Shown: positions 27,165-52,519, counted from the stretch's first letter. The stretch is DNA of 64,000 nt from Octopus sinensis (GCF_006345805.1 NC_043023.1:20646001-20710000); one strand, 5' to 3'. Program-made: numbers and translations. The notes: a model not told the origin generated them from the sequence alone.

Positions 27165-29194
27165 TAGGGTCATCCCATAATGCGGTTTTTTTTATACTTC
27201 TTTTATTTTTCAAGATTAAGATAATGTTCCTGTTTAATCTGAAATATACTCTCCTTCATTTTCTACAATGCTCTTCCATCTATCTGGTAGCCTTGCAAAG
27301 CCCCCTCTTCCAAAATTCACTTGTCCCCACGATGAAATATACTCCTCCAGTATTGTTCTGACCTCGTCTACAGAATTCATATTTTCCCCGTCCAAATGAT
27401 TTTGAAGACTGCGGAATAAATGATAATCAGATGGGGTAATGTCTGGGGAATATGGTGGGTGAGACATCGTTTCCCATTCAAACTACTCCAGTCTTTGGAA
27501 GCCATCCTTGCAGTATGTGATTGAGCATTATCCTGATGGAAGAACACCTTTTGTCTTGAAACCAAAGTTGGTTGTTTTTCCTCAAGCTACTTGCAGTAGA
27601 TCTCTTTTGTTATTGATTGGTTTGGGTTTAAAAGTTCAAAGTGGACTAAACCTTTCATATCCCACCAAACAGATAACAACACCATATGTGGGTGAAGACC
27701 TTCTTTACCCTGGGATGCTGGTGTTTCTCCTTTCCCCTGCTCACTGTCTTTGGTGCTTGACATTTTTATAGAGAACCCATTTCTTGTCACCAGTCACTGT
27801 TCAGTCCAAAAACAGTTCATTTGTGACATGTGACAGCAAAGAAGAGCACACATTCTCCGAATGCAGTTAGGCTCAGAAAGTTTGAGGAACCAATTTGACT
27901 CAATTTGCTGACTTATCTGATGGCATGCAGGTGTTGATGACTGGTTGAATGACCAAATCCAAGCTTCTCTTCTAGTTCCTCAACAGTAACGTTTGGATTT
28001 TGTTCTACCAGCGTTTGCAGGACATCTTTGTTGAACTCTGCAGATTGTCCAGGACGAGGTTTGTCTTCAAGGCTATAGTTTCCAGCTCAGAATTTCTGGA
28101 ACCACCGTTGACACTGGTTTACGCTTATTGTCCAATCCCATAACACTGAATTAATATTCCTCGCACCTTCTGCTACATTGGTGCCTTTGTTGAACTCATA
28201 ATGCAAAATGTGCTGAATATGTTCCTTTGTCACTTCCATTAACCCTTTAGTATTTAAACCAGCCATATCTGGCCAAAATATTTAATCTGTTTTATGTTCA
28301 AACTAACCAGATCCATGCTCTCACACCTACCCTACAATGTTATTCTACATTAAGTAATTACACCATCAAGATCTTGAAGATATGAGAAAATGCATGATTA
28401 ATTCAAATCAATGGGAATCAATAGGCATTATGTTTGATAGAATAATCTGAACACTAAAGGGTTAAACATGCTAAATATCAGTGTGATCCCACCATGACAT
28501 CCACCACCGCTTTATACTTAACCCTTTAGTATTTAAACCGGCCATATCCGGCCAAAAGTATTCTACCTGTTTTATGTTCAAACTGGCCAGATCCAGGCTC
28601 TCACACCTACCCTACAATGTTATTCTACATTAAGTAATTACACCATCAAGATCTTGAAGATATGAGATAATGCACGATTAATTCAAATCAATGGGAATCA
28701 ATAGGCATTATGTTTGATAGAATAATCTGAACACTAAAAGGTTAAACATGCTAAATATCAGTGTGATCCCACCATGACATCCACCACCGCTTTATACTTA
28801 ACCCTTTAGTATTTAAACCGGCCATATCCGGCCAAAAGTATTCTACCTGTTTTATGTTCAAACTGGCCAGATCCAGGCTCTCACACCTACCCTACAATGT
28901 TATTCTACATTAAGTAATTACACCATCAAGATCTTGAAGATATGAGATAATGCACGATTAATTCAAATCAATGGGAATCAATAGGCATTATGTTTGATAG
29001 AATAATCTGAACACTAAAGGGTGAAAGCTGTTAAAATCAAACTGCACTCTTCAAAACTTGCACTAAGAATAAGTACAAGGTAAAATTACTTCCTGCTTTT
29101 ATAGCAATTTGGATGCAGGTAGTTTATCTCATCCCCTTCCAACTTTCAGTTCATGCAATTGAAAAAAAAACACATTATTTATGGGATGATCCAA
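27165..29194 (-). mobile_element. Degenerate mariner (DD34D) transposon, interrupted by the MITE array
   Basis: TIRs (T)AGGGTCATCCCATAA and TTATGGGATGATCCAA with TA flanks. Frameshifted peptides MEVTKEHIQHIL, VLLSVWWDMKG, FHQDNAQSH, HPPYSPDITPSDYHLFRSLQNHL. Confidence 0.9.
28243..29021 (+). mobile_element. Composite array MITE1-X-MITE1-X-MITE1 (X = 52 bp between TTAA sites)
   Basis: MITEs at 28243-28461, 28522-28741 and 28802-29021. X at 28466-28517 and 28746-28797. TTAA at each internal junction. Confidence 0.92.
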
Positions 29195-29325
29195 TAAATA
29201 TAAAGTTGAAATGTGTTGAATGTGGTTGACCAGTGTCACCTGCGCAAACCCTTAATTAAAACACAATTATCTCATGTACCAAACCAACACGCAATTCAGT
29301 ATTTCTTTATTTGCATTTATTCCAG

Positions 29326-29388
29326 GGTTGTTCCTTAAGGATTCCCCATGTTGAGAGAAAGCTACTGGATTTATTTAATCTCTTCAAG
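29326..29388 (+). CDS. KDM5: KDM5 exon E2 (ARID): GCSLRIPHVERKLLDLFNLFK
   Basis: TTCCAG|GGT...AAG|GTAAGA. Matches KDM5A [21 protein letters not shown]. Confidence 0.93.
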
Positions 29389-29722
29389 GTAAGACCTTGT
29401 GTTATTTTTGTCTCACCCCTCACTGCATGCCTGTCTCTATCCCCACCACACACACTCTGGTAGACTCTGCTAATGACCAGTACAACAATAAGGTTTGTTT
29501 ACATGACCCCTTAAAGAGTACAGGGCTGGTTTCCCACTTTCTCTGGCATTTATAAAATCCTCCCTGAACAGGACATCTGTTGCAGGGGTTACTCATTTTG
29601 GATCTTTACCTTTTGACCAACAGATTTAAAAAATAATTTCTTGTCACTAACCACTTACGGACACTGGTAGAATGTGTCATATAAAACATCTTTTACTCTT
29701 AGCATTTTAATATTTAGCAGAG

Positions 29723-30090
29723 TGGAGGTGCAATGGCCCAGTGGTTAGGGCAGCGGACTCGCGGTTTCGATTCCCAGACCGGGCGTTGTGAGTGTTTATT
29801 GAGTGAAAACACCTAAAGCTCCACGAGGCTCCGGCAGGGGATGGTGGTGATCCCTGCTGTACTCTTTCACCACAACTTTCTCTCACTCTTACTTCCTGTT
29901 TCTGTTGTACCTGTATTTCAAACGGCCGGCCTTGTCACTCTCTGTGTCACACTGAATATCCCTGAGAACTACGTTAAGGGTACACGTGTCTGTGGAGTGC
30001 TCAGCCACTTACACGTTAATTTCACGAGCAGGCTGTTCCGTTGATCGGATCAACCGGAACCCTCGTCGTCGTAACCGATGGAGTGCTTCC
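29723..30090 (+). mobile_element. SINE family D
   Basis: tRNA-Arg-like head (with a small deletion) and full body. Confidence 0.9.
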
Positions 30091-30399
30091 GTTTAGCAGA
30101 AGTCCCAGAGTGATTCAAGGTCTGAGAGTTGGGATTGGCACTTACCAAAGCTGATAGGTGCCAATCCAGGAAACTCTTGAATCACTTTGTTATTTCTTCT
30201 AAATATCAATAAAAAAAAATATATTTATTTTATAATCAGGCTACTAGATAGTACCAGCATTGCTAGAAATAAGTGTCAAAAATGACTCAAAAACCACAGT
30301 TATCACTCATAAACACTCCTGAATTCGAGGAAATGAGTAAATATAAAAATTGCAAATGAGTGATAATGGACTGAACAATAATTAATCTTCACATCCTCT

Positions 30400-30820
30400 G
30401 ATAATCCACAGATGGTGATTTGACGATTTCCTGTCACAGTGGCACACACATCTGTGATGTTTTCCTCAGTTCTGCTGGTTGTGGGTCTCCCAGAACGTTC
30501 ATCAATATTGACATTTTTGGGGCCATCTTGAAAACCCCTAGACTACTTGTGCTCTTGTGTGTGGCTCATACACTCTCCGCAACTTTGTGTAGGCCTCTGA
30601 GCAGGTATCGCCATGACAGCTTTCTCGGTGATGGTCAATGCGACGATCACATGCTACACACCTTCCTTCCAAGCACTGCTGTAAACAGTGGAAGAGAGCT
30701 AAAAACGTTAAAACTTAGTGTGAATGCACAGCAAAGCTCAAAGTCAATCTTTGCCGAGCAGCGTCATTCTGCGTGCTTTTGTTTTGTTACTATGGCAACA
30801 GTCCGGATGCTTATTGATGA
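30400..30820 (-). mobile_element. Mariner/Tc1 N-terminal transposase fragment
   Basis: Minus strand FQDGPKNVNIDERSGRPTTSRTEENI resembles the mariner HTH/linker (DDERSGRP). Confidence 0.7.
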
Positions 30821-30855
30821 GACCTCGTGTGTGTGTGTATGTATATATATATATG

Positions 30856-31153
30856 TGGAGGCACAATGGCCTAGTGGTTAGGGTAGCGGACTCGTGGTCG
30901 TAGGATCGCGGTTTTGATTCCCAGACCGGGCGTTGTGAGTGTTTATTGAGCGAAAACACCTAAAGCTCCACGAGGCTCCGGCAGGGGGTGGTGGCGACCC
31001 CTACTGTACTCTTTCGCCACAACTTTCTCTCACTCTTTCTTCTGTTGGCCTGCTCGCTTAGCCAGCGGGGTGGCGTCATTTGAAGGCTAAAACAATGCGA
31101 AGCGCATTGTGACCAGCGATGTGTAACAACATCTGATGGCCTGGTCGGTCACA

Positions 31154-31160
<7 letters not shown>
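30856..31160 (+). mobile_element. SINE family D variant
   Basis: Same tRNA-Arg-like head with a different 3' body. A - copy is at about 33020-33262. Confidence 0.8.
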
Positions 31161-31246
<86 letters not shown>

Positions 31247-31446
31247 AGAGTTTACGAAAAAAACAGAATCCGAAGACAGGTGGTGTAGAAAACAAACAGA
31301 TGTATTAGTATAACGCTCAGGAATAGAAAAAGTCTTTTACATTTTGAGCCTACGCTCTTCTACAGAAAGGGACACAGAAAAAACAAGGAGAGAAAATAAA
31401 TGTGTGTAGTGGCTAACAATCTATCATGGCGACTATATATATATAT

Positions 31447-31640
31447 GCTCTTTTACTTGTTTCAGTCATTTGACTGCGGCCATGCTGGAGCACCGCCTTT
31501 AGTCGAGCATATCGACTCCGGGACTTATTCTTTGTAAGCCCAGTACTTATTCTATCGGTCTCTTTTGCCGAACCGCTAAGTGACGGGGACGTAAACACAC
31601 CAGCATCGGTTGTCAAGCAATGCTAGGGAGACAAACACAG

Positions 31641-31675
<35 letters not shown>

Positions 31676-31838
31676 CTTATATACGACAGGCTTCTTTCAG
31701 TTTCCGTCTACCAAATCCACTCACAAGGCATTGGTTTACCCGGGGCTATAGTAGAAGACACTCGCCCAAGATGCCATGCAGTGGGACTGAACCCGGAACA
31801 ATATGGTTAGTTAGCAAGCTACTTACCACACAGCCACT
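31447..31838 (-). mobile_element. SINE family A
   Basis: Reverse complement of family A. Another - copy is at 33661-34035. Confidence 0.9.
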
Positions 31839-32076
31839 CATATATATATTCCCAATTTATATTCCTGTGTGTTATATTGTAATGGTTACTGGTATATTTA
31901 TATATTAATATATGTATATGTAAAGCATAATATGTTACACATGTATGTATATTCTTGAAATAGTCATTTTCGTAAATAAATAAGTTGACATAATATAATG
32001 TCTAAAAGTTGATGAACCACCTATTGATCCCCTCCATTTGCTTGTTGCTCTCTCTCTCATATATATATATATATAA

Positions 32077-32351
32077 AATTATAATTAAGGGTTAATTGCA
32101 ACAAGTTGCTCAAAACCACGTACCGAAAATATTAGAAATAGCAGCCAAAATTGACCGCTATTTCCTCTACTAATAAAAAGCTGGGATTTCGTTATTTTCT
32201 TCCTTTTTTGCCATATACAGGTTACGAATTCTCTTTGTTTGTGGAGACTTTTTATTAGTAGAGGAAATAGTGGTCAATTTTGGCTGCTATTTCTAATATT
32301 TTCGGTATGTGGTTTTGAGCAACTTGTTGCAATTAACCCTTAATTATAATT
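32077..32351. repeat. Long inverted repeat (104-bp arms, 67-bp spacer), fold-back-like
   Basis: Arms 32077-32180 and 32248-32351, with 2 mismatches. Confidence 0.9.
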
Positions 32352-34089
32352 ATTATAACCCTTACCAAATATGGTCTTTTCCATACTGATAAATCTACTA
32401 GGTGAAATTGATTAATTTTATTAAATTAATTATATTCCACCCTTTATTGCATATATATATATATCTTCTTTTTTCTGCTCAGAGCTGCGGCCATGCTGAT
32501 GCCCCGTCATTCACACACACACACACACACATGCATGCATACATACACCACACATTTGTATGGTAATTGTATGTTGGTATAAAATGACTATTTATAAATG
32601 AATATAGGTGTGTGTGTGTGTGTGTGTGTGTGTGATGGGAATGATATATAAAAATAGGAAAAGACTGATTAATGTGTGGTAGGTTGTACACGCGGATATG
32701 GAATATAATTGATTAGAAACCATAGTGAAAAGATGTAGACAGATCAAAGAAGCAGTAAATATAAAAGCTGATGATAATCTAATCATTGAGCTGTGTTGAT
32801 ATCTGATCAATATGGTGGAGTTTGTTGGGAAAAAATCAATAAAGCTGACCTAAGCAATCTGATACAAAGTGCAGATGAGTCAGAGGCCCAGTGAATACAC
32901 GGGATATCTGCATTTCCTGTTTCAAATCCAGTCTGGTTTGACATGTGTAAGACACCCGCAGATGATGGGGGGATAGAGATTGTGGGTAGAAGGGTGGCTG
33001 TGTATGTATATCTGTATATGTGCGCTTCGCATTGTTTTAGCCTTCAAATGACGCCACCCCGCTGGCTAAGCGAGCAGGGCAACGGAAGAAAGACGGAAAG
33101 TTGTGGCGAAAGAATGCAGCAGGGGCAGCTGCCACCCCCTGCCGGAGCCTCTTGGAGCTTTAGGTGTTTTCGCTCAATAAACACAACGCCCGGTCTGGGA
33201 ATGGAAACCACGACCCTGCAACCGCGAGTCCGCTGCCCTAACCACTGGCCCATTGTGCCTCCACACACACACACACACACACACCTATATATATATTAGG
33301 GAGTATACCCAAACTTACAGGGAAAAATTAGATTTAGGATTAAATCAAATTTCACAGTATAAATATAAATTAAATTAATTTAAATTTTATATTTTATATT
33401 TATTTTTTGTTTTCTATGTTTTGGTTTTTGTCTTTCACTGTTTGAGTGGCCTAATAGTGGTTTTATCTCTAATTTAATTTATATTTATACATATATATGT
33501 ATATATATATGTGTGTATATATATGTGTGTATATATATGTGTGTATATATATGTATGTATATATATATGTATGTATGTATATATATATGTATGTATATAT
33601 ATATATATATGTATATATGTATATATATATATGTATATATAGATGTATATATATATATACTCTTTTTACTCTGCGGCCATGCTGGAGCACCGCCTTTAGT
33701 CGAGCAAATCGACCCCGGGACTTATTCTTTGTAAGCCCAGTACTTATTCTATCGGTCTCTTTTGCCAAACCGCTAGGTGACGGGAACGTACACACACCAG
33801 CATCGGTTGTCAAGCAATGCTAGGGGGACAAACACAGACACACAAACACATACACATACATATATATACATATATACGACAGGCTTCTTTCAGTTTCCGT
33901 CTACCAAATCCACTCACAAGGCATTGGTCGGCCCAGGGCTATAGCAGAAGACACTTGCCCAAGATGCCACGCAGTGGGACTGAACCCGGAACCATGTGGT
34001 TGGTTAGCAAGCTACTTACCACACAGCCACTCCTGCGCCTATATATATATATGTATATATGTATATATGTGTGTGTATATATGTATATA

Positions 34090-34122
<33 letters not shown>

Positions 34123-34139
34123 TAATATATATATATATA

Positions 34140-34308
34140 TATTGTTATATTTTGGAATGGTCATATTGCCAGTTTAGCCAATAAAAACACACGCACTATA
34201 TATTTGGTGTTATTTTGCTTCAGTGATATTTATTTTTTACATTAATCTTAATCTTATTTCGGCCAAAGTTCTTTCGTCACAATATGACCATTCCGAAATA
34301 TAACAATA
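34140..34308. mobile_element. Small MITE-like element with 29-bp TIRs
   Basis: TATTGTTATATTTTGGAATGGTCATATTG ... CAATATGACCATTCCGAAATATAACAATA (1 mismatch). Confidence 0.75.
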
Positions 34309-34359
34309 TCTGTTTCAACACACGACTTCACATAAAATCTTGCACACAAATATTTAAAC

Positions 34360-34415
<56 letters not shown>

Positions 34416-34859
34416 TTATATATATGAATATATGTATATAATATCACGTGTTTTCGATCAATAAACACACACAACGCCCGGTGTGGGAATCGAAACCGCG
34501 ATCCTATGACCGCGAGTCCGCTGCCCTAACCACTAGGCCATTGCGCCTCCATGTATATATATGTATATATATATATATGTATCGTTGCCAGCCTCGCCTG
34601 GCCCTCGTGCCGGTGGCACATAAAAAGCACCATCTGTTCGTGGCCGTTTGCCAGCTCTGTCTGGCACCTGTGCAGGTGGCACGTAAAAAGCACCCACTAC
34701 ACTCTCGGAGTGGTTGGCGTTAGGAAGGGCATCCAGCCGTAGAAACACTGCCAGATTTGACTGGGCCTGTTGAAGCCTTCTGGCTTCACAGACCCCAGTA
34801 GAACCGTCCAACCCATGCTAACATGGAAAACAGACGCTAAACGATGATGATGATGTATG

Positions 34860-35610: not shown

Positions 35611-36132
35611 TGACCATGTGTGTACCGTTGGCGATTTTTTCCCTCTGTCTTCCCTTCTCTGGATCTTTCCTTCTCCTATGTTTCCGACGAAGAGCTCCGC
35701 TCGAAACGTTAAACTCTCCTTCTTCCCTTCTTTCCTGAGCGTTAAATAATACTTTATTTGTTCCACGTCCTCACGTTGTGTTTTTTTGTTTTTTTGTGTT
35801 TGGATTAACTATATATATGTATGTATGTATATATCTATATATACACATACACATACACACACACATAAGGATAAGCATATTAAAAGGGTCCTTGGTAGTG
35901 GAAAGTTTGGGAGCCACAGGGTTATATATACATACATACCCCTAGCTGGCCATATCCAGCCTAAATATTCCACTAGTTTTAGGTTCAGACCAGTCAGATC
36001 TAGCCTCTCACACCTACCTTGCAATGCCATTCTATAAAAATAAACATCATCAAAATCTTGAAGCTATGAGACAATGCTTGATTAATGCAAAATCTTGTTA
36101 ATAAATGAGTAATTACTTTGGACCGAGCGATC

Positions 36133-36817
36133 ATCATCATCATCATCGTTTAACGTCCGTTCTCCATGCTAGCATGGGTTGGACTGTTCGACCGGGGATC
36201 TGGGAAGTCAGAAGACTGCACCAGGCTCCGGTCTTATCTGGCAACGTTTCTACAGCTGGATGCCCTTCCTAACGCCAACCACTCTGTGAGTGTAGTGGGT
36301 GCTTTTTACGTGCCACCTGCACTGGTGCCAGGCGAGGCTGGCATCGGCCACGGTCGGATTGGTGCATTTTATGGAAGCCAGTCGAGGCGGCACTGGCTTC
36401 GGCTACGATTTGTATGGTGCTTTTTACGTGCCACAGACAGAGAAGCCAGTCGAGGCGGCGCTGGCATCGGCCACAATTCGGATGGTGCATTTTATGGAAG
36501 CCAGTCGAGGCAGCACTGGCTTCGGCTACGATTCGGATGGTGCTTTTTACGTGCCACCGACACGGAAGCCAGTCGAGGCGGCGCTGGCATCGGCCACAAT
36601 TCGGATAGTGCTTTTTACGTACCTCCAGTCCCAGGGCCCTGGCATCTGCCGGGTGCTAGTCATAGGATTGGTTCAATTTCGATTTCGATTTCACTTGCCC
36701 CAACAGGTCTTCGCAAGCAAGGGGGGTTGCCATAGGTGCCTGTCGTCGGATGAGGTTTGATATCGACTTCGCTTGCCTCAACAGGTCTTTGTGTGTCCAA
36801 GGGGGGAAAGGCATGCA
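36133..36817 (-). mobile_element. Long SINE family C copy with 34-bp TSD, inserted in a MITE1-like element
   Basis: TAATAAATGAGTAATTACTTTGGACCGAGCGATC at 36099-36132 and 36818-36851; (ATC)n tail at left; internal about 55-bp repeats. Confidence 0.9.
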
Positions 36818-36907: not shown

Positions 36908-37084
36908 ATCGTTGAAGAGGAGACCGGTTATGACTATGTCTGTAAAGAGAGAAGGTGGTCGAAAGTGGCCTGTAGACTTGGGCTACCCACTGGAAAAGGA
37001 TTAGGATCCATAATTAAGGCTCACTATGACCGCATACTCTACCCATTTTGGCTTTTTAAAAATGACCAGCCCTTTTCACACAAG
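36908..37084 (+). CDS. KDM5: KDM5 exon E3 (ARID): IVEEETGYDYVCKERRWSKVACRLGLPTGKGLGSIIKAHYDRILYPFWLFKNDQPFSHK
   Basis: TTGTAG|ATC...AAG|GTAAGT. Matches KDM5A KEKKWSKVGSRLG...GKGTGSLLKSHYERILYPY. Confidence 0.95.
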
Positions 37085-38419: not shown

Positions 38420-40810
38420 CATGTCTCTTATGCTCATACGGTTGCCCTTTCACCATATATATTACTCTACCAGGACGTTTGGTTATTCGTCCTTGTTTCC
38501 CATATTTGTACATTTAAAAAAATACTGTGTCCCCTATATTGAAATAGTTTGTATTGTTAGGGTTAGGGTTCTTCTGTATTAGTTGTTTCTCTCCTGGTAA
38601 CAATTTATCAAATACTGATCGTATCTTTCTGGCGAACATTAATTCAGTGGGTGACATACCCAACTCTCTGTTGGGGTTTGGTGTTATTCTGTAGACGTGT
38701 AAAAATTTTGTCAGTGTATTATCCACTAATGATTTGTTTCTGGTTTTCCTCAACACACTTTCAAATGTATCTACGAACCTCTCCACAAGTCCATTTGACT
38801 TGATAATCGTGGGGTAGTGACATGTTCCATTTGATGCGTCTTACAAAAATCTTTGCACTCTTTTGCTGTAAATTGCGTGCCATTATCTGACATTATAGTG
38901 TTCGTCACGCCAAAATGTGCAAATATTTCATCCCAAAATTCAGTAGTTGTTACCAATCAAACGTGGCCAATGCCAGTGCCACTTTGACTGGCTTCTGTGC
39001 TGGTGACACATACAAAGCACCAACAGATTGTTGTTGATGCCAACTCTTCTGGCCCCTGTGCTGGTGGCACGTAAAATGCACCCACTACACTCTCGGCGTG
39101 GTTGGCATTAGGAAGAGCATCCAGCTGTAGAAACACTACCAGATCAGATTGGGGCCTGGTGCAGCCTCCTGGCTTCTCAGTCCCCAGTTGAACCATCCAA
39201 CATGTGCTAGCATGGAAAATGGGCGTTAAACCGATGATGATGATTTTTGTAGTTGTTTGTTTACACTTACAGATTTCAGGCCATTTTGTGTAGTTATCTA
39301 CCACTACCAGATAATATACACCATTTCGTGGTCCTGCAAAATCTATGTGTAGTCTAGAGCAGGCTATATCTGTCTTTGACCACTGTTGAATCTTTACTGG
39401 AGGTACCTTAGCTGTCAGGGTGCATCCCCTGGATGCTTTCACCAGATTCTCAATACCTTCATCCATAGTAGGCCAGTAAACATAACTCTTCATGATGTCC
39501 TTCATTCTTACAATTCCATCAAATTCTTTCAGCATCTTATTTTGTCGTTCAACAGGTATCCCAACCCTCTGAACGCACATCAACACATTGTCACACGTTG
39601 AATAGAATTTCAAACCTGTGTTACACTCAGCGCCATAGTTTTATGTGCTTACTCCGGTGGCACGTAAAAAGCACCCACCAGAATTGATATATTCCTGAAC
39701 AATATAAAAAAAAAAATATACACATAAACCACAAAAACAGTTGGGATATCATTTTAGGGCAAAAAAAATTTTCAATAATAAAATTATTAAATCATAATTA
39801 GCGCCGCTGGCCGATGCCAGCGCCGTCTCGACTGGCTTCCGTGTCGGTGGCACGTAAAAAGCACCATCCGAATCGTGGCCGAAGCCAGTGCCACCTCGAC
39901 TGGCTTCCGTGCAGGTGGCACGTAAAATGCACCAATCCGACCGTGGCCAATGCCAGCCTCGCCTGGCACCAGTGCAGGTGGCACGTAAAAAGCACCCACT
40001 ACACTCTCGGAGTGGTTGGCGTTAGGAAGGGCATCCAGCTGTAGAAACTCTGCCAGATCAGACTGGAGCCTGGTGCAGCCATCTGGCTTCCCAGATCCCC
40101 GGTCGAACCGTCCAACCCATGCTAGCATGGAGAGCGGACGTTAAACGATGATGATGATTAGTATTTTTTTCATTTAATAAATGCATTCTTTCTGCTTTCC
40201 TTTTTCTCTCTTCCCATGTGACTGGTAGTAACCGCACTACATTGCAGAGAGTATTTTTTAAATTCAATTTCTGATTTTAACGCTGCTATTACTAAATCTT
40301 CTAACGGTTCCTTATACTTCGGGATCAATCTCGACAGCCTGTCTGCGTGTCCCAATTTCTTCAAGGGCAAAAATTCCATTTTGAAAACATAATTTAGTAG
40401 GGTAGTCTCCCCCAGCATTGTAGTCGATTGGCTGTATGTGTAGGGGACACCTGTTTTTGATCCATATATTGTTAATAGCGGACGGTGTCTGCAAAGTAGA
40501 CTTTCTGCTGTGCAAGAATTTATGAAATTTTTTCACTGCAAAGATAATGGCCAATGCCTCTTTTTCTAGCTGTAATCTTTTTTTTTTTTGCTGATAGTAA
40601 TGCATGTGACACATATGTGATCGGTTTTACGTTACTATTTTCCAACTTATCTAAGATTACTGCTCTGATCCCAGGCTCGCTAGCATCTGATGCTTCAGTT
40701 ATTTTTAGTTTCGGATCAAAATGTGTTTGAGATAGCTCTGATGTCAACATCTTTTTAATCTCTTTGAATGCTTTTTGGCATTCGTCAGTCCAACACCATT
40801 TCATGTAAAA
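38420..40810 (-). mobile_element. Ty3/Gypsy pol remnant (RNase H + integrase), disrupted by SINE C insertions
   Basis: LEKEALAIIFAVKKFHKFL, HADRLSRL, GIVRMKDIMKSYVYWP, RLHIDFAGP...LVVVDNYTKWPE, IMSDNGTQF, SPTELMFARKIR; frameshifted. Confidence 0.9.
39679..39999 (-). other. Inverted ectopic copy of 53944-54269 (SINE C part + KDM5 intron end + 18 nt of exon E10)
   Basis: Reverse complement reads ...CCCTAAAATGATATCCCAACTG...ATATTGTTCAG|GAATATATCAATTCTGGT, about 98% identical to the E10 acceptor region. Confidence 0.92.
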
Positions 40811-41345: not shown

Positions 41346-41471
41346 GCTACCGACATGCACTCTGAAAGTGTTGATGATAAATCAGACAAGGAATATAAGC
41401 CACATGGTATAATAGCGACAGACTCCACCAGTGGTGGTTACACAAGGAAAACTAAACGAAATATTAACAAA
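41346..41471 (+). CDS. KDM5: KDM5 exon E4: ATDMHSESVDDKSDKEYKPHGIIATDSTSGGYTRKTKRNINK
   Basis: CTGCAG|GCT...AAA|GTAAGT. Contains the DKEYKPH motif of KDM5 proteins; frame 0-0. Confidence 0.88.
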
Positions 41472-43347: not shown

Positions 43348-43468
43348 ACTCCTGTCGTCCAAAACAATGTTCCAAATTCCAAAATCGACTACTCTGCTAA
43401 CAACGAGCTGAGAAAGCTACAGTTTTATGGAGCGGGGCCCAAAGCAGCAGTTCCCAGCACGGTGAAAG
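43348..43468 (+). CDS. KDM5: KDM5 exon E5: TPVVQNNVPNSKIDYSANNELRKLQFYGAGPKAAVPSTVK(phase 1)
   Basis: TTTCAG|ACT...AAAG|GTAAAA. NELRKLQFYGAGPK matches KDM5A NTELKKLQIFGAGPK. Confidence 0.92.
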
Positions 43469-43994: not shown

Positions 43995-44760
43995 TTGGGC
44001 ACCAAACTGGTAATCAGTTAACATTTTCATTATAGATTTAATTTTCAGAAATCATTATCGGAGTAATTAACTTCCATTACATTTAACTTCTGTTAACTCA
44101 AGTCAACTCGAGTTAACTCCTGTTAACTTCAGCTCAATTAAAGTTAACAGAATTTATAGTTTTGGCACTTTTTAACCCTTTAGTGCTTAAACCGGCCATA
44201 TCCCGTACATGTTTCATGTTAAAACTGGCCATATCCAGCCTCTCACACCTAATCTACAATGTCAGTCTAAAGGTAAACAATCACATCATTGAAACCTCAA
44301 AGCTACAAGATAATTCATGATTAATTCAAAACAAGAAATATTGAATTTCTAAATCTCTCGTAGAGACATGTACGGTGGTGGGACGATAGAATGGTTGTAT
44401 ACTGTCAATCTAACAAGAACGTGACAGTAGGGGGTACACCACCGCTGTATAGCCCTAGGAAGCATCGAACACCTCCTGATGGCTTTGACACATTTTTCCC
44501 TGTGTCCTATATTCAAAACAGTTTGAGTGAAAAAGTATTACATTTAACAGAGAAATCTGAACACCAAAGGGTTAAAGGTGTTTTTAGGTGGTTTTAGAGT
44601 AAAAACTGAGTTTTTGTTCTTTTTTTATAATGAAAATTAACGATGACGGTTTGTTGATAGCTTCTGTTACATTTAAAAAAAATTAGCTGATTGACGGTTA
44701 TTAAAATTAACTAGTTGGTTAACAGTTAACGAAGTTATCTTTTTCATTAACGGTGCCCAC
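43995..44760. mobile_element. Nested stack: GGGCACC...GGTGCCC element rich in GTTAAC, containing MITE1 (44176-44571), which contains a 177-bp insert
   Basis: Terminal GGGCACC (43997) and GGTGCCC (44752). TTAA-flanked MITE. Insert 44334-44510 with 10-bp TSD ATTCAAAACA. Confidence 0.65.
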
Positions 44761-45140: not shown

Positions 45141-45181
45141 ATGCAGTTATCATTTCTTTTTTTTCTTTTCATTTTTCACAG

Positions 45182-45246
45182 AAGAGAAGACTGATGGCAA
45201 AGTGAAAAAAGATTGTAAGACAAAAATTAAAGATGAATTTCCCCCT
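45182..45246 (+). CDS. KDM5: KDM5 exon E6 (linker): (E)EKTDGKVKKDCKTKIKDEFPP
   Basis: TCACAG|AA...CCT|GTAAGT. The 65-nt phase 1-0 exon restores the frame between E5 and the PHD exon. The sequence itself is poorly conserved. Confidence 0.8.
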
Positions 45247-45359
45247 GTAAGTATTTCTCCTCATTCCACATTCGATCATGGTTCCGTCTAACTACCCAAC
45301 TCATGTCACCATGGAACAGCATCGCTGCTAAATGACGATAATGATAACGGGAAATAGAC

Positions 45360-45880
45360 AAGGTGGTGAGCTGGCAGAATCGTTAGCACGCCAGGTGAAA
45401 TGCTCGGAGGTATTTCGTCTGCCGTTACGTTCTGAGTTCAAATTCCACCGAGGTTGACTTTGCCTTTCATCCTTTCGGGGTTGATTAAACAAGTACCAGT
45501 CTGTTTGTCTGTCCTTGTTTGTCCCCTCTGTGTTTAGCCCCTTGTGGGTAGTAAAGAAATAGGTATTTCGTCTGTCGTTACGTTCTGAGTTCAAATTCCG
45601 CCGAGTTCGACTTTGCCTTTTGTCCTTTCGGGGTTGATTAAACAAGTACCAGTTACGCACTGGGGTCGATGTAATCGACTTAATCCGTTTGTCTGTCCTT
45701 GTTTGTCTGCTCTGTGTTTAGCCCCTTGCGGGTAGTAAAGAAATAGGTATTTCGTCTGTCGTTACGTTCTGAGTTCAAATTCCACCAAGGTTGACTTTGC
45801 CTTTCATCCTTTCGGGGTCAATGAATTAAGTACCAGTGGAACACTGGGGTCGATGTAATGGACTGGTCCCAAATTTCAGG
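45360..45880 (+). mobile_element. SINE family B multimer
   Basis: Head plus repeated bodies. Similar clusters at 48520-49470 and 50264-50670. Confidence 0.85.
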
Positions 45881-46835
45881 CCCCACCCCAATTTTCAGGT
45901 CTTGTGCCTTTAATAGAATGGGTTATTATTATTATTATTATTATTAATAATAATAATAATGATGATGATGATGATAATAATAACAATAATAATAATGTGG
46001 TGAGCTGGAAGAATTGTTAGTATGTTGGATGAAATGCTTAGTGGTATTTTGTCCGCCACTACTTTCTAAGTTTGAATTCTGCCAAAGCTGGCTTTGCCTT
46101 TCATCCTTTCAGGGTCGATGGAATCGATTCATCCCCTCCTCTGAAATGGCTGCTCTTGTGGAAAAATTTGAAACCATTATTAATTAATTTATTTATTATT
46201 ATTATTATTATTAAGGTGGTGAGCTGGCGGAAACGTTAGCATGCTGGGGGGGGGGATGCTTTGTAGCATTTCGTCCGTCTTTGCGTTCTGGGTTCAAATT
46301 CTGCTACATCCAACCTTGCCTTTCATCCTTTCGGGGTCAGTAAAATAAGTACCAGTTGAACACTGAGGTCAATGTAAATTGACTCGTCCCTTCCCTCAAA
46401 ACTGCTTCCCTTGTGGCAAAATTTGAAACCATTATTATTATTATGGCTGGGGCCTAACCTGGGCCGCAGCAACAAAGTCCACCCATCACATTTCTTGACC
46501 CATCATCTCTGCCTCAATGTCCTGGATACATTCCAGACCAATGTCTGCAATCCTACCTTTATTGGCTGTAAACATTGGTCTGAATATTTCGATTTTCATG
46601 CTGGAAAATGTGTAATAAAAATTTCCTACAATAATATTTGAGATGGCATAGGTGTGGCTGTGTGGTAAGAAGCTTGCTTCCCAACCACATGGTTCTGGGT
46701 TCAGTCCCACTGCGTCACACCTTGGGCAAGTGTCTTCTACTATAGCCTTGGGCTGACCGAAACCTTGAGAGTGGATTTGGTAGATGGAAACTGAAAGAAG
46801 ACCTTCGTATATACGTATATATATATATATATATA

Positions 46836-47045
46836 TATGGGTTTCAAGGGCCCACAGCTTTTTAATATTCTCCCAAAGAGTCTGAGGAACTTGCACAAAG
46901 TAGATGTAGGGGTTTTTAAATCAAAGCTGGACCTCTTCCTGTCAAGACTCCCAGATGAACCTACCTCACGGCAAGAGGTGCAAATGAGGGTAGCTACATC
47001 AAACTCCATTCTTCACCAAGTGCCACATATTAGAGGAGGCTCTTA
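46836..47045 (+). mobile_element. LINE (CR1/L2 group-like) ORF C-terminal fragment
   Basis: GPQLFNILPKSLRN...FKSKLDLFLSRLPDEP...SNSILHQ. Confidence 0.65.
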
Positions 47046-47897
47046 GTAATAACAGTGTAGCACAAAACAGCGGTGCATCAGCATGGCCGCAGCTCTGAGC
47101 TGAAACTAGAGCGAAAAAATATATTTTTTTTTCATTTTTCATTTTTCCAGTTTCAGCTAATGAGCTGTGGCCATGCTGGGGCACCGCCATATATAACTTA
47201 TAAACAAGGGCAAATGTCCTTGTTTATAAATTTAACCTTTAAAGATATTTTTTTTAATATGCTGGCCATTGATAAAATTTTTTTCGAAAAGCTTTATCCT
47301 ATATTGGTTGGCGTTAGGAAGGGCATCCAGCTGTAGAAACATTGCCAGATTAGACTGGAGCCTGGTGCAGCCTTCTGGCTTCCCAGAACCCCGGTCGAAC
47401 CGTCCAACCCATGCTAGCATGGAGAACGGACGTTAAACGACGATGATGATGATGATGATGTGTGTGTGTGTGTGTCTATGTTTGTTCTCCCACCATCGCT
47501 TGACACCAATGTTGGTGTGTTTACATTCCCGTAACTTAACATTTCAACAAAAGAGACCGATAGAATACGTATTAGGCTTGCGAAGTCCTGGAGGTTGATT
47601 TGTTTGACGGGGGCGGGGGGTGGGGGGCTTGCTCCAGCATGGCCGCAGTCGTATGACTGAAACAGGTTAAAGAATAACAGAAGGGTGTACATAGTGATTA
47701 TACTAGAATTCATTCTGTTAAAAAAAAAGGGGGTGTAGATGGGAATATTCCAAGCACCTCAGCCTTGATCCCTCATGCATTTTGCTGGGCCCCACCCATG
47801 CTGGGCCTTGCTTTCAGCCTTGTTTAGATCAGATTTAATGACAGCAATTTCCCCCATTTACAAAAGCATTAACCGCGTCTAATTATGCTGCTTGCAG

Positions 47898-48056
47898 GTG
47901 GATGCTTATGTGTGTCACGTCTGTGCTAAAGGAGACGGCGAAGAGTTTATGTTACTATGTGATGGATGTGATGATGCGTTCCACACCTACTGCCTTACAC
48001 CACCGATGCCTGAAGTGCCCAAAGGAGACTGGAGATGTCCGACATGTGTAAAAGAG
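47898..48056 (+). CDS. KDM5: KDM5 exon E7 (PHD1): [53 protein letters not shown]
   Basis: C4HC3 PHD finger; TTGCAG|GTG...GAG|GTGACT. Confidence 0.97.
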
Positions 48057-48093
48057 GTGACTGCATTGCTTTTCTTTTCTTATCAATTTACAT

Positions 48094-48432
48094 CAGTGGT
48101 TCCCAAACTATGGGTCGCGAACGGAATCTTAGTGGGTCGCAAAAAGTTATAAAATTACGCATTAGCTTTGATTAACTGTTATCTATCGAGATAGTTCAAG
48201 ACTCCTGTTTTCAATACCAGACTTGTTGTTTTATCAAGCAGTAGGCTTTTTCACGAACTTAACAAATCAGAGATTGTCATTTTCTCAAGTTATTTATTTG
48301 TACGCAATCGTAAAAAGGAAAGGTCTGTTTTTACCCATTTATAGAGAACTTTAACCCGGAGAGTTAAGTGGGTCATCATAAACTGGTGTGATAAATAGTG
48401 GGTCGTGACTCTAAAAAGTTTGGAAGCCACTG
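48094..48432. mobile_element. hAT (Charlie-like) MITE
   Basis: TIR CAGTGGTTCCCAAACT / AGTTTGGAAGCCACTG (14/16) with perfect 8-bp TSD ATTTACAT (48086-48093, 48433-48440). Confidence 0.9.
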
Positions 48433-49567
48433 ATTTACATGTTTTTTCAACCCACCCACCTCTTGTCCCCTCTATTTTGTCATTAATGCTATTATTATTA
48501 TTGTAACATATAGAAATTAAGGAGCCAATCTGGCAGAAACGTTAGCACTCTGGGCGAAATGCGTAGCCGTATTTCGTCTGCTGTTATGTTCTGAGTTCAA
48601 ATAGGGTGGCGAGCTGGCAGAAACGTTAGCACGCCGGGCAAAATGCTTGGCGGTATTTCGTTTGTCGGTACGTCTAAGTTCAAATTCCGCTGAGGTTGAC
48701 TTTGCCTTTCATTCTTTCGGGGTCAACAAATTAAGTACAGTTGTGTACTGAGGTCAATGTAATTGACTGACCCCCCCCCTTCCCCAAATTTTGAGCCTTA
48801 TGCCTAGAGTAGAAAAGAATATTTATCTAGATGAAAGGCCACGAGCTGGCAGAAATGTTAGCACGCCGGGAGAAATGCTTAGTGGTATTTCGTCTGCCGC
48901 TACGTTCTAAGTTCAAATTCCACTGAGGTGGACTTTGCCTTTCATCCTTTCGAGGTCAATAAATTAAGTACCAGTTACGCACTGGGGGCGATGTAATCGA
49001 CTTTATCCCTTTGTCTGTCCATGTTTGTCCCCTCTGTGTTTAGCCCCTTATGGGTAGTAAAGAAATAGGTATTTCATCTGCCTTTACGTCCTGAGTTCAA
49101 ATTCTGCCGAGGTCGACTTTGCCTTTCATCCTTTCGAGGTCAACAAATTAAGTACAGTTGTGTACTGAGGTCAATGTAATTGACTGACCCCCCCCCTTCC
49201 CCAAATTTTGAGCCTTATGCCTAGAGTAGAAAAGAATATTTATCTAGACGAAAGGCGGCGAGCTGGCTGAAATGTCAGCACGCCGGACGAAATGCTTAGT
49301 GGTATTTCGTCTCTCTTTATGTTCCGAGTTCAAATTCCACTGAGGTTGACTTTACCTTTCATCCTTTCGAGGTTCATAAATTAAGTACCAGTTGCATACT
49401 GGAGTCGATCTAATCGACTGGCCCCTCCACCCCCAAATTTCGGGCTTTGTGCCTAAAGTAGAAAAGAATATACAGATATGGAAACATTTTAGTCTCAGAC
49501 CCAGAATAATAAATCTGAATAGCATAAATAGAATAGAACATCCTTATATTGCAGAAAAATTTGTTCG

Positions 49568-49641
49568 TGGCCAGCCATGAGACTTGAACTCACATCCCTG
49601 TGATTACCAGTCATAGTGCTTTACCTTTAAGCTCAACTGCC
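49568..49641 (-). pseudogene. tRNA-like cloverleaf (anticodon loop CT-GGT-AA, Thr-like), probably a pseudogene or SINE head
   Basis: D stem GCTT/AAGC; anticodon stem with 1 mismatch; T arm GTGAG-TTCAAGT-CTCAT; imperfect acceptor stem; G at position 8. Confidence 0.55.
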
Positions 49642-50100
49642 CACTGACAAATTCTTCTGCAATTCTTGAACGTATAAATTTAGCTTTTATAGATGCTATA
49701 TGTGAAATTCCGTTATATGTAAACAAAGTTTTTTTTTTTTTTTTTGGAGGTGTTGAAATATATAAGAATGGAAATATTGCATTCTCAGATGCAGAATAAT
49801 AATTCTGAAAAAAGCCCAAATAGGATACAACATCCTTATAAAATTATTATTGCGTTGTCAAAACTAAAACCATTCCGTCCCTCCATGGCATTTTTGAGGG
49901 CTTCTGTTTGTAACTTGTCATACAAGGGAGTCGATTGATATACGTCGTTCTGGGTCATCCCACATGACAATTCCCATGACATGGGATCGAAAAAGGGATT
50001 CATTTATTCACCTCTCTACTCCACCCCTGTTTTCCTTTTGCTCTTGTAAAATTCATCTACCCCCATCATGTGTTCAATCTCTTGCTTCTGTTCTGTTCAG

Positions 50101-50220
50101 GCTTGCAAACCCCTTCATGATGTCTACGGATTTGAGCAGGCTGCCAAAGAATACACACTGCAATCATTTGGAGAAATGGCAGATCAGTTCAAGTCGGATC
50201 ACTTCAATATGCCTGTTCAT
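50101..50220 (+). CDS. KDM5: KDM5 exon E8: [40 protein letters not shown]
   Basis: GTTCAG|GCT...CAT|GTAAGG. Matches KDM5[33 protein letters not shown]. Confidence 0.97.
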
Positions 50221-51212
50221 GTAAGGACCTTGCTCTTGTTAATATACATCTTCCACCCAGAAGGGCGGCGAGCTGGCAGAACCGTTAGCACGCCGGGCGA
50301 AATGCGTAGCCGTATTTCGTCTGCCGTTACGTTCCGAGTTCAAATTCCGCCGAGGTCGACTTTGCCTTTCATCCTTTCGGGGGTCGATAAATTAAGTACC
50401 AGTTACGCACTGGGGTCGATGTAATCGACTTAATATCTATGTCTGTCCTTGTTTGTCCCCTCTGTCTTTAGCCCCTTGTGGGTAATAAAGAAATAGGTAT
50501 TTCGTCGTTCTGAGTTCAAATTCCGCCGGGGTCGACTTTGCCTTTCATCCTTTCGGGGGTCAATAAATTAAGTACCAGTTACGCACTGGGGTCGATGTAA
50601 TCAACTTAATCCGCTTGTCTGTCCTTGTTTGTCCCCTCTGTGTTTGGCCCCTTGTGGGTAGTAAAGAAACAGATACATATACATCTTCCACCCATGACCC
50701 CACCCTCCTGCAACATTTGAAGGACTAAGTTATTCAAATACCTGCCAGATTCCACTTATTTCTTATTTTTATTCTCCTAAACTTTCTTTGCGTCTTGCAA
50801 ATTTTCAATAGTCTTGACTCTCATTTTGTTTGTCATTAACACAACATTTTGGCTGATACACCCTCCAGCCTTCAAGACACCTGACAAAGGACAAATATCC
50901 GTCAAATGTAAATAATGTGAGGTTGTGAGTTCATTTCTGGTGGACCGTTATGTCCTTGAGCAAGACTCTTTATTTCACATTGTTCCGGTTCACTCAGCTG
51001 GCAGAAGTAATTCAAAGGGTCAGCCTTGTCACGTTCTGTGTCACACTGAATCTCCCTGTGAACTACATTCCCAGTACACATGTCTGTGGAGTACTCAGCC
51101 ACTTGCATATTTATCTCACGAGCAGGCTGTTTCGTGGATCAGATATACTTGAACCCTAATTATAATAAGCGATGGAGTGCCAGTATTTATGTGTGTGTGT
51201 GTATATATATAT

Positions 51213-51254
<42 letters not shown>

Positions 51255-51509
51255 ACAATGTGCATTGTCAGTTTAATTAAAAAATTCTATATGTGGCTGA
51301 AGATTGCTCGACATTTTAAAACTGATGTAATACTTGCATTGTTTAATAAAATGAAGTAGCATGAAACGATTGTACTACTCTAACTTGGATATCCTTGTTG
51401 CTTACTTTGATTATAATCACTCCCATTTGATTTATATGGATAATACCATACAAAATTCTGGTGCCTTCAACTTAAGTACCATATTCATCTGAATCTAAAT
51501 TTTACTGAA

Positions 51510-51542
<33 letters not shown>

Positions 51543-51954
51543 TCATCATTTAACGTCCGTTTTCCATGCTAGCATGGGTTTGACGGTTCGACCGAAGTCT
51601 GGTAAGCCATGGAGGCTGCACCAGGCTCCAGTCTGATTTGGCAATGTTTCTATAGCTGGATGCCCTTCCTAAAGCCAACCACTCCGTGAGTGTTTTTTTA
51701 CGTGCCACCTGCACAGGAGCCAGTCAAAGTGGCGCTGGCATCGGCCATGATCGGTTGGTGCTTTTTACACGCTACCAGCACGGACGCCAGTCAGGCGACG
51801 CTAGTAACTGCCACGCTCGAACGGTGCTTTTACACACATATATATACTCTTATCTATCTATTTGTCTATTCACAAACACCATGTACACGCATACACACAC
51901 CATGTACTGTATATATTTCTTCATGACTTCTGTTTTACCCCCATTCTATTCTAG

Positions 51955-52110
51955 ATGGTCTCATTTGATCAAGTGGAAAAGGAATTTTGGCGTCTTGTGA
52001 ACACCCTTGAAGAAGAAGTGTCTGTCCAGTATGGAGCAGACATCCACGCCATGGAGAAAGGAAGTGGATTCCCCACCAAGGGCAACAAACAGACCTTTCC
52101 TGAAGACGAA
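51955..52110 (+). CDS. KDM5: KDM5 exon E9: [52 protein letters not shown]
   Basis: TTCTAG|ATG...GAA|[15 protein letters not shown]...YGADI...GSGFP is conserved. Confidence 0.97.
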
Positions 52111-52179
52111 GTCAGTTCTTTCCCCTCTTTTCTCTTCATTTCTCTCTCTGGAAGTCGGGGTGGTGTCAGTGAATTGTGT

Positions 52180-52519
52180 TTAAGTATAAAGCGGTGGTGG
52201 ATGTCATGGTGGGATCACACTGATATTTAGCATGTTTAACCCTTTAGTGTTCAGATTATTCTATCAAACATAATGCCTATTGATTCCCATTGATTTGAAT
52301 TAATCGTGCATTATCTCATATCTTCAAGATCTTGATGGTGTAATTACTTAATGTAGAATAACATTGTAGGGTAGGTGTGAGAGCCTGGATCTGGCCAGCT
52401 TGAACATAAAACAGGTAGAATACTTTTGGCCGGATATGGCCGGTTTAAATACTAAAGGGTTAAGTATAAAGCAGTGGTGGATGTCATGGTGGGATCACAC
52501 TGATATTTAGCATGTTTAA
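52180..52519 (-). mobile_element. X-MITE1-X composite (reverse complement of the 28.2-29.0 kb unit)
   Basis: TTAA-X(52184-52235)-TTAA-MITE(52240-52459)-TTAA-X(52464-52515)-TTAA. Confidence 0.92.

What the first reader, a model, noticed from the sequence alone, without database searches (positions are those of the whole stretch)
28462..52519. Inverted 340-nt near-perfect repeats bracket KDM5 exons E2-E9: circRNA geometry with a stop-free 987-nt circle
Seen: 28462-28801 and 52180-52519 are reverse complements with about 3 mismatches in 340 nt. The array ends 304 nt before the E2 acceptor and the partner starts 69 nt after the E9 donor. E2-E9 total 63+177+126+121+65+159+120+156 = 987 nt = 329 codons, phase 0 at both ends, with no stop. 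Established: complementary repeats in flanking introns promote back-splicing and are ADAR substrates, and coleoids edit RNA heavily. Inference: a transposon-built switch producing a circular RNA with an endless ARID-PHD1 reading frame, or an in-frame catalytically defective skipped mRNA.
Basis: partly seen in the sequence, partly recalled or inferred. Interest (0 to 1): 0.8.

Follow-up and report, generated by a model that had tools for sequence, protein, structure and literature searches.

The report
Inverted transposon copies in KDM5 introns
Two near-identical copies of a small piggyBac-type transposon sit in opposite orientation in two introns of a cephalopod-like KDM5 gene; this could let the pre-mRNA fold and occasionally form a circular RNA, but such pairs are common in this gene and nothing here shows that a circle is made.

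Summary
Positions 28462-28801 and 52180-52519 are reverse complements with exactly 3 mismatches in 340 nt. They flank eight KDM5 exons totalling 987 nt, phase 0 at both ends, with no stop, and the quoted back-splice junction is right.

The arms are copies of a 280-nt unit: a 227-nt TTAA-flanked piggyBac-type MITE plus a 52-nt spacer. It is present as 2.8 tandem units on the left and 1.2 units on the right.

The features presented as special are not. 45 of 55 exon blocks among E1-E10 would give stop-free circles, because nearly all introns are phase 0. 23 of 55 intron pairs carry inverted matches. A longer rival pair (488 nt, 96.5%) shares the same downstream intron. The circle would also encode an ARID domain clipped at its N-terminus.

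Published octopus data report few, low-level circRNAs, attributed to ADAR. No tool here can test back-splicing, skipping or editing.

Most likely these are young, neutral repeat copies that form an intronic ADAR-substrate duplex and drive at most weak circularisation, a well-known mechanism.

The rival pair is more unusual. It is an inverted copy of the exon-10 acceptor plus 21 nt of coding sequence.

The parts
28239..29025 (+). Left repeat array in intron E1-E2: TTAA-MITE(L1)-TTAA-spacer-TTAA-MITE(L2)-TTAA-spacer-TTAA-MITE(L3)-TGAA, 2.8 units of 280 nt.
   Evidence: TRF period 280, 2.8 copies, 97%. MITE and spacer hits. Alignment A1 shows L1 is a mosaic: the first ~82 nt are about 11% diverged and the rest differs at 2-3 positions. 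The outer 3' target-site copy is degraded to TGAA.
52180..52519 (-). Right repeat copy in intron E9-E10, in the opposite orientation: TTAA-spacer-TTAA-MITE-TTAA-spacer-TTAA (1.2 units). It starts 69 nt after the E9 donor.
   Evidence: 3 mismatches in 340 nt against 28462-28801. Absent from the ~700-nt E9-E10 intron of a relative (L001).
26886..26945 (+). Exon 'E1' (window numbering), encoding AKSRIRLNFLDQLARFWELQ, the start of the ARID domain. Ends in phase 0.
   Evidence: Pfam ARID spans residues 7-88 of E1+E2+....
29326..29388 (+). Exon E2 (63 nt), the proposed back-splice acceptor exon.
36908..37084 (+). Exon E3 (177 nt), ARID core.
   Evidence: tblastn.
41346..41471 (+). Exon E4 (126 nt), linker.
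   Evidence: Splice sites and frame. The DKEYKPHGI motif is shared with P0004 and P0013.
43348..43468 (+). Exon E5 (121 nt), linker with the ELRKLQFYGAGPK motif. Followed by the only phase-1 intron.
45182..45246 (+). Exon E6 (65 nt), linker. The least certain exon.
   Evidence: Frame and splice-site logic. Modest similarity across the E5|E6 junction to P0002.
47898..48056 (+). Exon E7 (159 nt), PHD1 finger.
50101..50220 (+). Exon E8 (120 nt).
51955..52110 (+). Exon E9 (156 nt), the proposed back-splice donor exon. Donor GT at 52111.
54252..54344 (+). Exon E10 (93 nt, phase 0/0), a core part of JmjC.
39674..40158 (-). Left arm of the rival, stronger inverted pair, in intron E3-E4. It is an inverted copy of 53785-54272 and includes the E10 polypyrimidine tract, acceptor AG and first 21 nt of E10.
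53785..54272 (+). Right arm of the rival pair: repeat sequence plus unique intron end plus the first 21 nt of E10.
   Evidence: Cofold net about -635 kcal/mol.
16612..17664 (.). Three solitary, older copies of the same MITE family: 16612-16839 (+), 16872-17095 (-) and 17436-17664 (+). Each is TTAA-flanked and lacks the 52-nt spacer.
   Evidence: 69-83% identity.

Best explanation
The two arms are young copies of one repeat unit: a 227-nt non-autonomous piggyBac-type transposon (MITE) with TTAA target sites and CCCTTTAGT/ACTAAAGGG termini, plus a 52-nt spacer. The copies lie in opposite orientation in introns E1-E2 and E9-E10 of a KDM5 (JARID1) gene in a very repeat-rich, octopus-like genome.

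Shown here:
- the repeat anatomy;
- the exon model;
- the many competing inverted pairs;
- absence of the right arm in a relative.

Inferred origin: the copies arose by transposition combined with local recombination or repair between repeat copies, not by selection for a structure.

Inferred behaviour: when both introns are still unspliced in the pre-mRNA, the arms can form a ~340-bp almost perfect duplex. The most probable fate of that duplex is promiscuous A-to-I editing by ADAR, followed by removal with the introns and no effect on the mRNA. As a minor by-product it may bring the E9 donor and E2 acceptor together and yield a low-level 987-nt circle, or E1-E10 skipping. I regard the arrangement as a neutral, lineage-specific by-product of repeat turnover and a candidate circRNA locus, not a demonstrated switch.
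For: Repeat identity:
- Solitary TTAA-flanked copies of the MITE lie elsewhere in the window at 69-83% identity.
- The spacer occurs only at the two arms.
- The first MITE copy (L1) is a mosaic and the outer target-site copy is degraded to TGAA.
- piggyBac families are reported as recently active in O. vulgaris, whose genome is about 66% repeats (PMC13282606).

Not special:
- 660 inverted pairs of at least 60 nt lie in the window.
- 23 of 55 intron pairs carry inverted matches.
- Four pairs have net duplex energies of -430 to -635 kcal/mol; this pair is -460.
- 45 of 55 exon blocks give stop-free circles.

Lineage-specific: a relative with about 80% exon identity has a ~700-nt E9-E10 intron containing neither repeat.

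Low prior for circles:
- Octopus circRNAs are few and low, and most editing is in introns and 3'UTRs (PMC9699675).

Geometry compatible with weak back-splicing:
- Neither flanking intron has an internal inverted competitor.
- The arms lie 69 nt and about 290-520 nt from the splice sites.
Against: - This pair has the highest identity in the window and lies closest to both relevant splice sites. In flies and mammals such a pair can be sufficient for efficient circularisation, including co-transcriptionally with ~400-nt repeats (PMC4617980). A substantial circle therefore cannot be excluded.
- No RNA data were available, so neutrality is a default, not a result.
- The species was not identified, so the octopus literature is applied by analogy.
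- The origin of the arms (transposition versus recombination) is unresolved.
Confidence: 0.75

Rival explanations
1. One reading: the inverted repeats are a functional, transposon-built device. It efficiently produces either a 987-nt circular RNA that is translated around an endless reading frame, or a regulated E1-E10 skipped mRNA encoding a catalytically dead KDM5.
For: - The geometry is right: a 340-bp duplex with 3 mismatches, 69 nt from the donor and about 300-520 nt from the acceptor, with no within-intron competitors.
- The circle and the skip are both in frame, and the circle contains in-frame ATG codons.
- Inverted DNA-transposon copies are proven drivers of circles at laccase2 (PMC4617980).
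Against: - The stop-free property is trivial (45 of 55 blocks).
- Many competing pairs exist, including a stronger one that uses the same downstream intron.
- ARID would be clipped.
- Octopus circRNAs are few and low, and ADAR antagonises this mechanism (PMC9699675).
- The left arm lies in a short 2.4-kb intron transcribed about 23 kb before the right arm, so that intron may be spliced out first (inference).
- The right arm is absent in a relative.
- There is no evidence for an IRES, for m6A-driven initiation or for regulation.
Confidence: 0.06
2. The near-identity of the arms reflects local ectopic recombination (gene conversion or break repair) between two repeat copies within the gene, not two fresh insertions. 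On this view the structure is a footprint of repeat-mediated repair at this locus. This rival concerns origin only and is compatible with the best explanation's account of behaviour.
For: - L1 is a mosaic of an old 5' part and a young 3' part, and the outer target-site copy is degraded to TGAA while the inner copies are 99-100% identical.
- The right copy ends in spacer sequence, not in transposon termini.
- The spacer is found only at these two sites in the window.
- The neighbouring 488-nt inverted pair clearly copied unique intron and exon sequence and ends in a repeat motif, a hallmark of repair-mediated copying.
- The young (at least 94%) dispersed pairs listed are all local and all inverted.
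Against: - All joints are TTAA, which also fits piggyBac chemistry. For example, precise excision of the two outer MITEs from a three-MITE composite would leave exactly spacer-MITE-spacer (inference from the known precise excision of piggyBac).
- Without the rest of the genome, I cannot tell whether MITE+spacer arrays are dispersed elsewhere; searches outside the window found nothing.
Confidence: 0.4
3. The inverted duplicate is an assembly artefact, such as a collapsed or chimeric repeat.
For: Near-identical repeats are error-prone in assemblies, and no read data could be checked.
Against: - Both copies have sharp TTAA-delimited ends embedded in unique intron sequence next to well-formed exons.
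- The copies differ at 3 positions and in unit number.
- Other young inverted pairs in the window have different structures.
Confidence: 0.03

Closest known systems
Drosophila laccase2 (and PlexA) circRNA loci with inverted DNAREP1_DM transposon copies (Kramer et al. 2015, PMC4617980)
   Same: Lineage-specific inverted copies of a DNA-transposon-derived repeat lie in the introns flanking the circularising exons, close to the splice sites. Base pairing brings donor and acceptor together.
   Different: - At laccase2 the circle is abundant and base pairing was proven necessary by compensatory mutagenesis; here no RNA evidence exists.
- laccase2 is a single exon flanked by introns of more than 9 kb, with repeats only 69-75% identical.
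- Here there are eight exons spanning 23 kb, flanking introns of 2.1-2.4 kb and 99% identity.
Inverted Alu pairs (IRAlus) or reverse-complementary matches flanking mammalian and C. elegans circRNAs, with ADAR antagonism (Jeck 2013; Zhang 2014; Ivanov 2015, as cited in PMC4617980 and PMC9699675)
   Same: Repeat-derived complementary sequences lie across flanking introns. Competition among alternative pairs determines which circle forms. Such duplexes are ADAR substrates, and editing lowers circle output.
   Different: The repeat family differs (piggyBac-type MITE plus spacer, not a SINE). The host lineage has been reported to make few circRNAs.
piggyBac-superfamily MITEs
   Same: TTAA target-site duplication, short CCC...GGG terminal inverted repeats, a ~220-nt non-coding body and multiple dispersed copies of differing age.
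   Different: The young copies occur as a 280-nt tandem unit with a 52-nt TTAA-bounded spacer. One locus ends in spacer sequence, not in transposon termini. No autonomous partner was identified.
Rolling-circle ('infinite ORF') translation of stop-free circRNAs (my own knowledge, e.g. Abe et al. 2015 and circ-EGFR; not checked here)
   Same: The circle length is a multiple of 3 and has no in-frame stop.
   Different: This property is shared by 45 of 55 exon blocks in this gene. No evidence exists for initiation or translation.

Membership tests
Repeat-driven exonic circRNA locus (reverse-complementary matches in flanking introns) | Long complementary sequences in the intron upstream of the acceptor exon and downstream of the donor exon | tested here: met
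   340 nt with 3 mismatches; net cofold energy about -460 kcal/mol.
Repeat-driven exonic circRNA locus (reverse-complementary matches in flanking introns) | Canonical splice sites at the back-splice acceptor and donor exons | tested here: met
   E2 acceptor ...ttccag|GGTTGT and E9 donor GACGAA|gtcagt.
Repeat-driven exonic circRNA locus (reverse-complementary matches in flanking introns) | Cross-intron pairing is favoured over competing pairings | tested here: inconclusive
   Neither flanking intron has a within-intron inverted match. The E9-E10 intron, however, has inverted partners in six upstream regions, including a stronger 488-nt pair.
Repeat-driven exonic circRNA locus (reverse-complementary matches in flanking introns) | A back-splice junction is detected in RNA and is resistant to RNase R | not testable with these tools
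   No RNA-seq access. The held supplements of PMC9699675 do not name KDM5 among circRNAs, but no per-gene list could be read.
piggyBac-type MITE | TTAA target-site duplication | tested here: met
   TTAA lies on both sides of the solitary copies at 16612, 17436 and 44173 and at every joint of the arrays. The single exception is the TGAA at 29022.
piggyBac-type MITE | Short terminal inverted repeats beginning CCC...GGG, with no coding capacity | tested here: met
   5' CCCTTTAGT and 3' ACTAAAGGG (9 nt perfect) in all copies; the body is 227 nt including the TTAAs.
piggyBac-type MITE | Multiple dispersed copies | tested here: met
   At least five further copies or fragments in the window at 69-83% identity.
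piggyBac-type MITE | A related autonomous piggyBac element with matching termini in the same genome | not testable with these tools
   The rest of the genome is not available. Outside searches found nothing.
KDM5/JARID1 histone demethylase gene | ARID, PHD1 and JmjC segments, collinear with known KDM5 proteins | tested here: met
   E = 4e-97 to human KDM5A, with the alignment continuous across exon joins. Pfam finds ARID and PHD. JmjC exons were found by tblastn.

The most novel reading that the evidence does not exclude
Recombination among intronic repeat copies in this KDM5 gene has built several long, almost perfect inverted duplicates that act on the pre-mRNA. The MITE pair would loop out E2-E9, giving a circle or a skipped mRNA. 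The 488-nt pair would bury the exon-10 acceptor and the first seven codons of a JmjC exon in double-stranded RNA, acting like an editing complementary sequence for ADAR recoding or as an exon-10 skipping element. Together these would make demethylase output tunable by editing activity.
Probability: 0.05. Interest if true: 0.6.

Novelty: new member of a known kind. Interest (0 to 1): 0.2.

Why it matters
If a circle or skipped isoform were actually produced, this would be a clean invertebrate example of a young DNA-transposon pair rewiring the output of a chromatin regulator. It would come from a lineage where heavy ADAR activity is thought to suppress circRNAs.

As it stands, the value is mostly cautionary. 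In a genome that is roughly two-thirds repeats, inverted intronic pairs and stop-free exon blocks are the rule, so neither feature predicts function.

The more instructive by-product is evidence that repeat-mediated local recombination creates long inverted duplicates within a gene. One of these has captured a splice acceptor and coding sequence.

Tried and rejected
1. Cephalopod KDM5 proteins or transcripts to anchor the exons. The protein collection returned nothing closer than about 65% for the spliced query. Exons were therefore defined from splice sites, frame and distant homologues.
2. Cross-species presence or absence of the arms. Only one short relative contig (L001, 1285 nt) was retrievable. 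It shows that the right arm and the rival arm are both absent, but its intron is not alignable, so no empty site could be shown. Its run accession is not mentioned in any searchable paper. The left arm could not be tested.
3. Other genomic copies of the MITE+spacer composite. Two metagenome scans (spacer core; MITE terminus) and a protein search with peptides read from the unit all found nothing.
4. A per-gene circRNA list for octopus. The held supplements of PMC9699675 do not mention KDM5.
5. Rfam at gathering threshold. It found only a tRNA-like hit, unrelated to the arms.
6. Rejected: that the three A.C mismatches mean anything. Any transition in one arm gives A.C or G.U with equal chance, so the probability is 1/8.
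7. Rejected: that the weak similarity between the spacer start and the native flank after L3 (about 14 of 19 nt) is informative. It is probably chance in AT-rich sequence.
Full report
**Observation**

The two stretches are real. The repeat finder lists arms 28462-28801 and 52180-52519 as 340 nt at 99% complementarity. A base-by-base comparison gives exactly three mismatches, all transitions.

The left arm is not a single element. It lies inside a tandem array at 28239-29026 with a 280-nt period and 2.8 copies. The right arm holds 1.2 units. The right arm can therefore pair with the left array in three registers: 340 nt at 99%, 299 nt at 97.7% and 284 nt at 95.8%.

**The gene**

The + strand carries a KDM5/JARID1 gene. 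A concatenate of the obvious coding pieces matches human KDM5A at E = 4e-97, and the alignment runs unbroken across the exon joins.

I rebuilt the exon model from AG/GT-bounded stop-free segments and tblastn with distant homologues.

- E4 and E5 are supported by conserved linker motifs in homologues; E6 has only modest support.
- The numbering is window-relative. The JmjN exons are not in the window.
- 'E1' (26886-26945) already encodes the start of ARID: Pfam places ARID at residues 7-88 of E1+E2+.... An E2-E9 product would therefore carry an N-terminally clipped ARID, PHD1 and only the first part of JmjC.

**What the repeat is**

Each 280-nt unit has two parts.
- A 227-nt element bounded by TTAA, with termini CCCTTTAGT...ACTAAAGGG.
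- A 52-nt spacer, also bounded by TTAA.

Older solitary copies of the 227-nt element lie elsewhere in the window at 69-83% identity: 16612-16839, 16872-17095 and 17436-17664, plus fragments at 35948 and 44173-44575. They are TTAA-flanked and lack the spacer. This is the signature of a non-autonomous piggyBac-type MITE. A recent repeat annotation of Octopus vulgaris reports about 66% repeats and recently active piggyBac families (PMC13282606). I did not identify the species of the window, so that paper is context only.

The young copies have an odd architecture.
- The left locus reads MITE-spacer-MITE-spacer-MITE.
- The right locus, in the opposite orientation, reads spacer-MITE-spacer, so it ends in spacer sequence and not in transposon termini.
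- The first left MITE is a mosaic: its first ~82 nt are about 11% diverged and the rest differs at 2-3 positions.
- The outer 3' target-site copy is degraded to TGAA.

I read this as an older resident MITE partly overwritten and expanded by recombination with the young unit. The alternative is piggyBac chemistry: precise excision of the outer MITEs from a composite would leave exactly spacer-MITE-spacer. I cannot exclude that. Searches for further copies outside the window found nothing.

**Is the arrangement special?**

Only modestly.
- The window has 660 inverted pairs of at least 60 nt.
- 23 of 55 intron pairs carry an inverted match of at least 40 nt at 80% or more.
Each brackets a different block: E2-E9, E4-E9, E1-E2 and E3.
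- Every intron from E1 to E10 is phase 0 except E5|E6. As a result, 45 of 55 possible exon blocks give a circle whose length is a multiple of three with no stop. The 'endless frame' is therefore a consequence of intron phase, not a design feature.

In the pair's favour:
- It has the highest identity in the window.
- It lies closest to both splice sites, 69 nt from the donor and about 290-520 nt from the acceptor depending on register.
- Neither flanking intron holds an internal inverted competitor.

**The rival pair**

The strongest inverted match in the window is 39674-40158 against 53785-54272, 488 nt at 96.5%. Its right arm lies in the same E9-E10 intron.

Its homology does not stop at a repeat boundary. 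It runs through the unique 3' end of the intron, the polypyrimidine tract, the acceptor AG and the first 21 nt of exon 10. The inverted copy then joins directly to another copy of the repeat's GGTGCTTTTTACGTGCCACC motif.

This is an inverted segmental copy made by repair or conversion between repeat copies, not a clean insertion. It shows that local recombination shapes this locus. It also means that a ~490-bp duplex could sequester the exon-10 acceptor and seven JmjC codons. I could not test any consequence.

**Comparative evidence**

I used the ORF that runs from the E9 ATG into the right arm as a query. It retrieved one contig from a relative with about 80% nucleotide identity in E9 and E10 (Logan, SRR9969974). 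Its E9-E10 intron is about 700 nt, against 2141 nt here, and contains neither the MITE copy nor the rival arm. The right-hand insertions are therefore lineage-specific. The left arm could not be tested.

**Mechanism**

It is established that inverted transposon copies across flanking introns promote back-splicing. At Drosophila laccase2 they are necessary, species-specific, and sufficient with about 100 nt (PMC4617980). The same paper stresses that many exons flanked by complementary repeats do not circularise.

In Octopus vulgaris, total RNA-seq of 18 tissues gave only 296 high-confidence circRNAs. Most were seen in a single tissue and at low levels. The authors attribute this to ADAR melting intronic duplexes, and they found most editing in introns and 3'UTRs (PMC9699675).

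In such a setting, a long near-perfect duplex is more likely to be hyper-edited than to drive efficient circularisation. In addition, the left arm sits in a 2.4-kb intron transcribed about 23 kb before the right arm, so it may often be spliced out first (inference).

My best estimate is as follows.
- These are neutral young repeat copies.
- Duplex formation and editing in a fraction of pre-mRNAs is likely.
- A detectable E9->E2 circle is possible but probably weak. I put it at roughly 0.1-0.3, depending on sequencing depth.
- A translated or regulatory 'switch' is unlikely, at about 0.05.

**Novelty and verdict**

The special features are generic, and the product is untested.

The mechanism invoked is well known, so at most this is a new candidate member of a known kind. 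Interest is low, about 0.2. The most interesting thing found is incidental: the inverted copy of the exon-10 acceptor region.

Noticed in passing
window 39674-40158 (-) and 53785-54272 (+): This is the strongest inverted pair in the window (488 nt, 96.5%). It includes unique sequence: the 3' end of intron E9-E10, the polypyrimidine tract, the acceptor AG and the first 21 nt of exon 10, all copied in inverted orientation into intron E3-E4. In the pre-mRNA it could mask the E10 3' splice site, or act as an editing-complementary sequence for the first seven JmjC codons of E10.
   Followed up: partly
window 39660-39700 (minus strand): The inverted copy of the E10 start is fused directly to a GGTGCTTTTTACGTGCCACC repeat motif. 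This suggests template switching or ectopic repair between repeat copies, not transposition.
   Followed up: partly
window 23810-24378 and 29779-30090: Another young inverted pair (97-98%) has the same 'tandem array versus single copy' layout: a 257-nt period with 2 copies upstream of E1, against one copy in intron E2-E3. It brackets E1-E2. More diverged relatives of this family appear near 38.0 kb and 50.9-51.1 kb.
   Followed up: no
window: All dispersed repeat pairs of at least 150 nt and at least 94% identity listed by self-BLAST are in inverted orientation. One direct pair at about 96% (36131-36371 vs 53780-54020) appears only in the ungapped repeat finder list. A bias toward young inverted local duplicates was not tested statistically.
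   Followed up: no
window 28239-28321 vs 28519-28601: The first MITE of the left array is a mosaic, with a diverged 5' third and a near-identical remainder. The array's outer 3' target-site copy reads TGAA instead of TTAA.
   Followed up: yes
window 16612-17664: Three older copies of the same MITE family lie within about 1 kb in +, -, + orientation upstream of E1, forming their own local inverted arrangement.
   Followed up: no
window 49567-49642 (-): A tRNA-Thr(GGT)-like sequence lies in intron E7-E8 (ARAGORN; Rfam tRNA 34 bits). It sits among abundant tRNA-related SINE-like repeats with a ~171-191-nt period at 20873-21599, 45503-45864, 50330-50669 and 62845-63364. It could be a SINE head or a genuine tRNA gene.
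   Followed up: no
L001 1-1285 (Logan SRR9969974): A relative's KDM5 E9 and E10 are about 80% identical at nucleotide level. They are separated by only ~700 nt of intron, against 2141 nt in the window, so the difference here is largely repeat insertions.
   Followed up: yes
window 26886-54344: Nine of the ten intron boundaries around E1-E10 are phase 0; only E5|E6 is phase 1. Almost any exon skipping or circularisation in this part of KDM5 would therefore be frame-preserving.
   Followed up: yes
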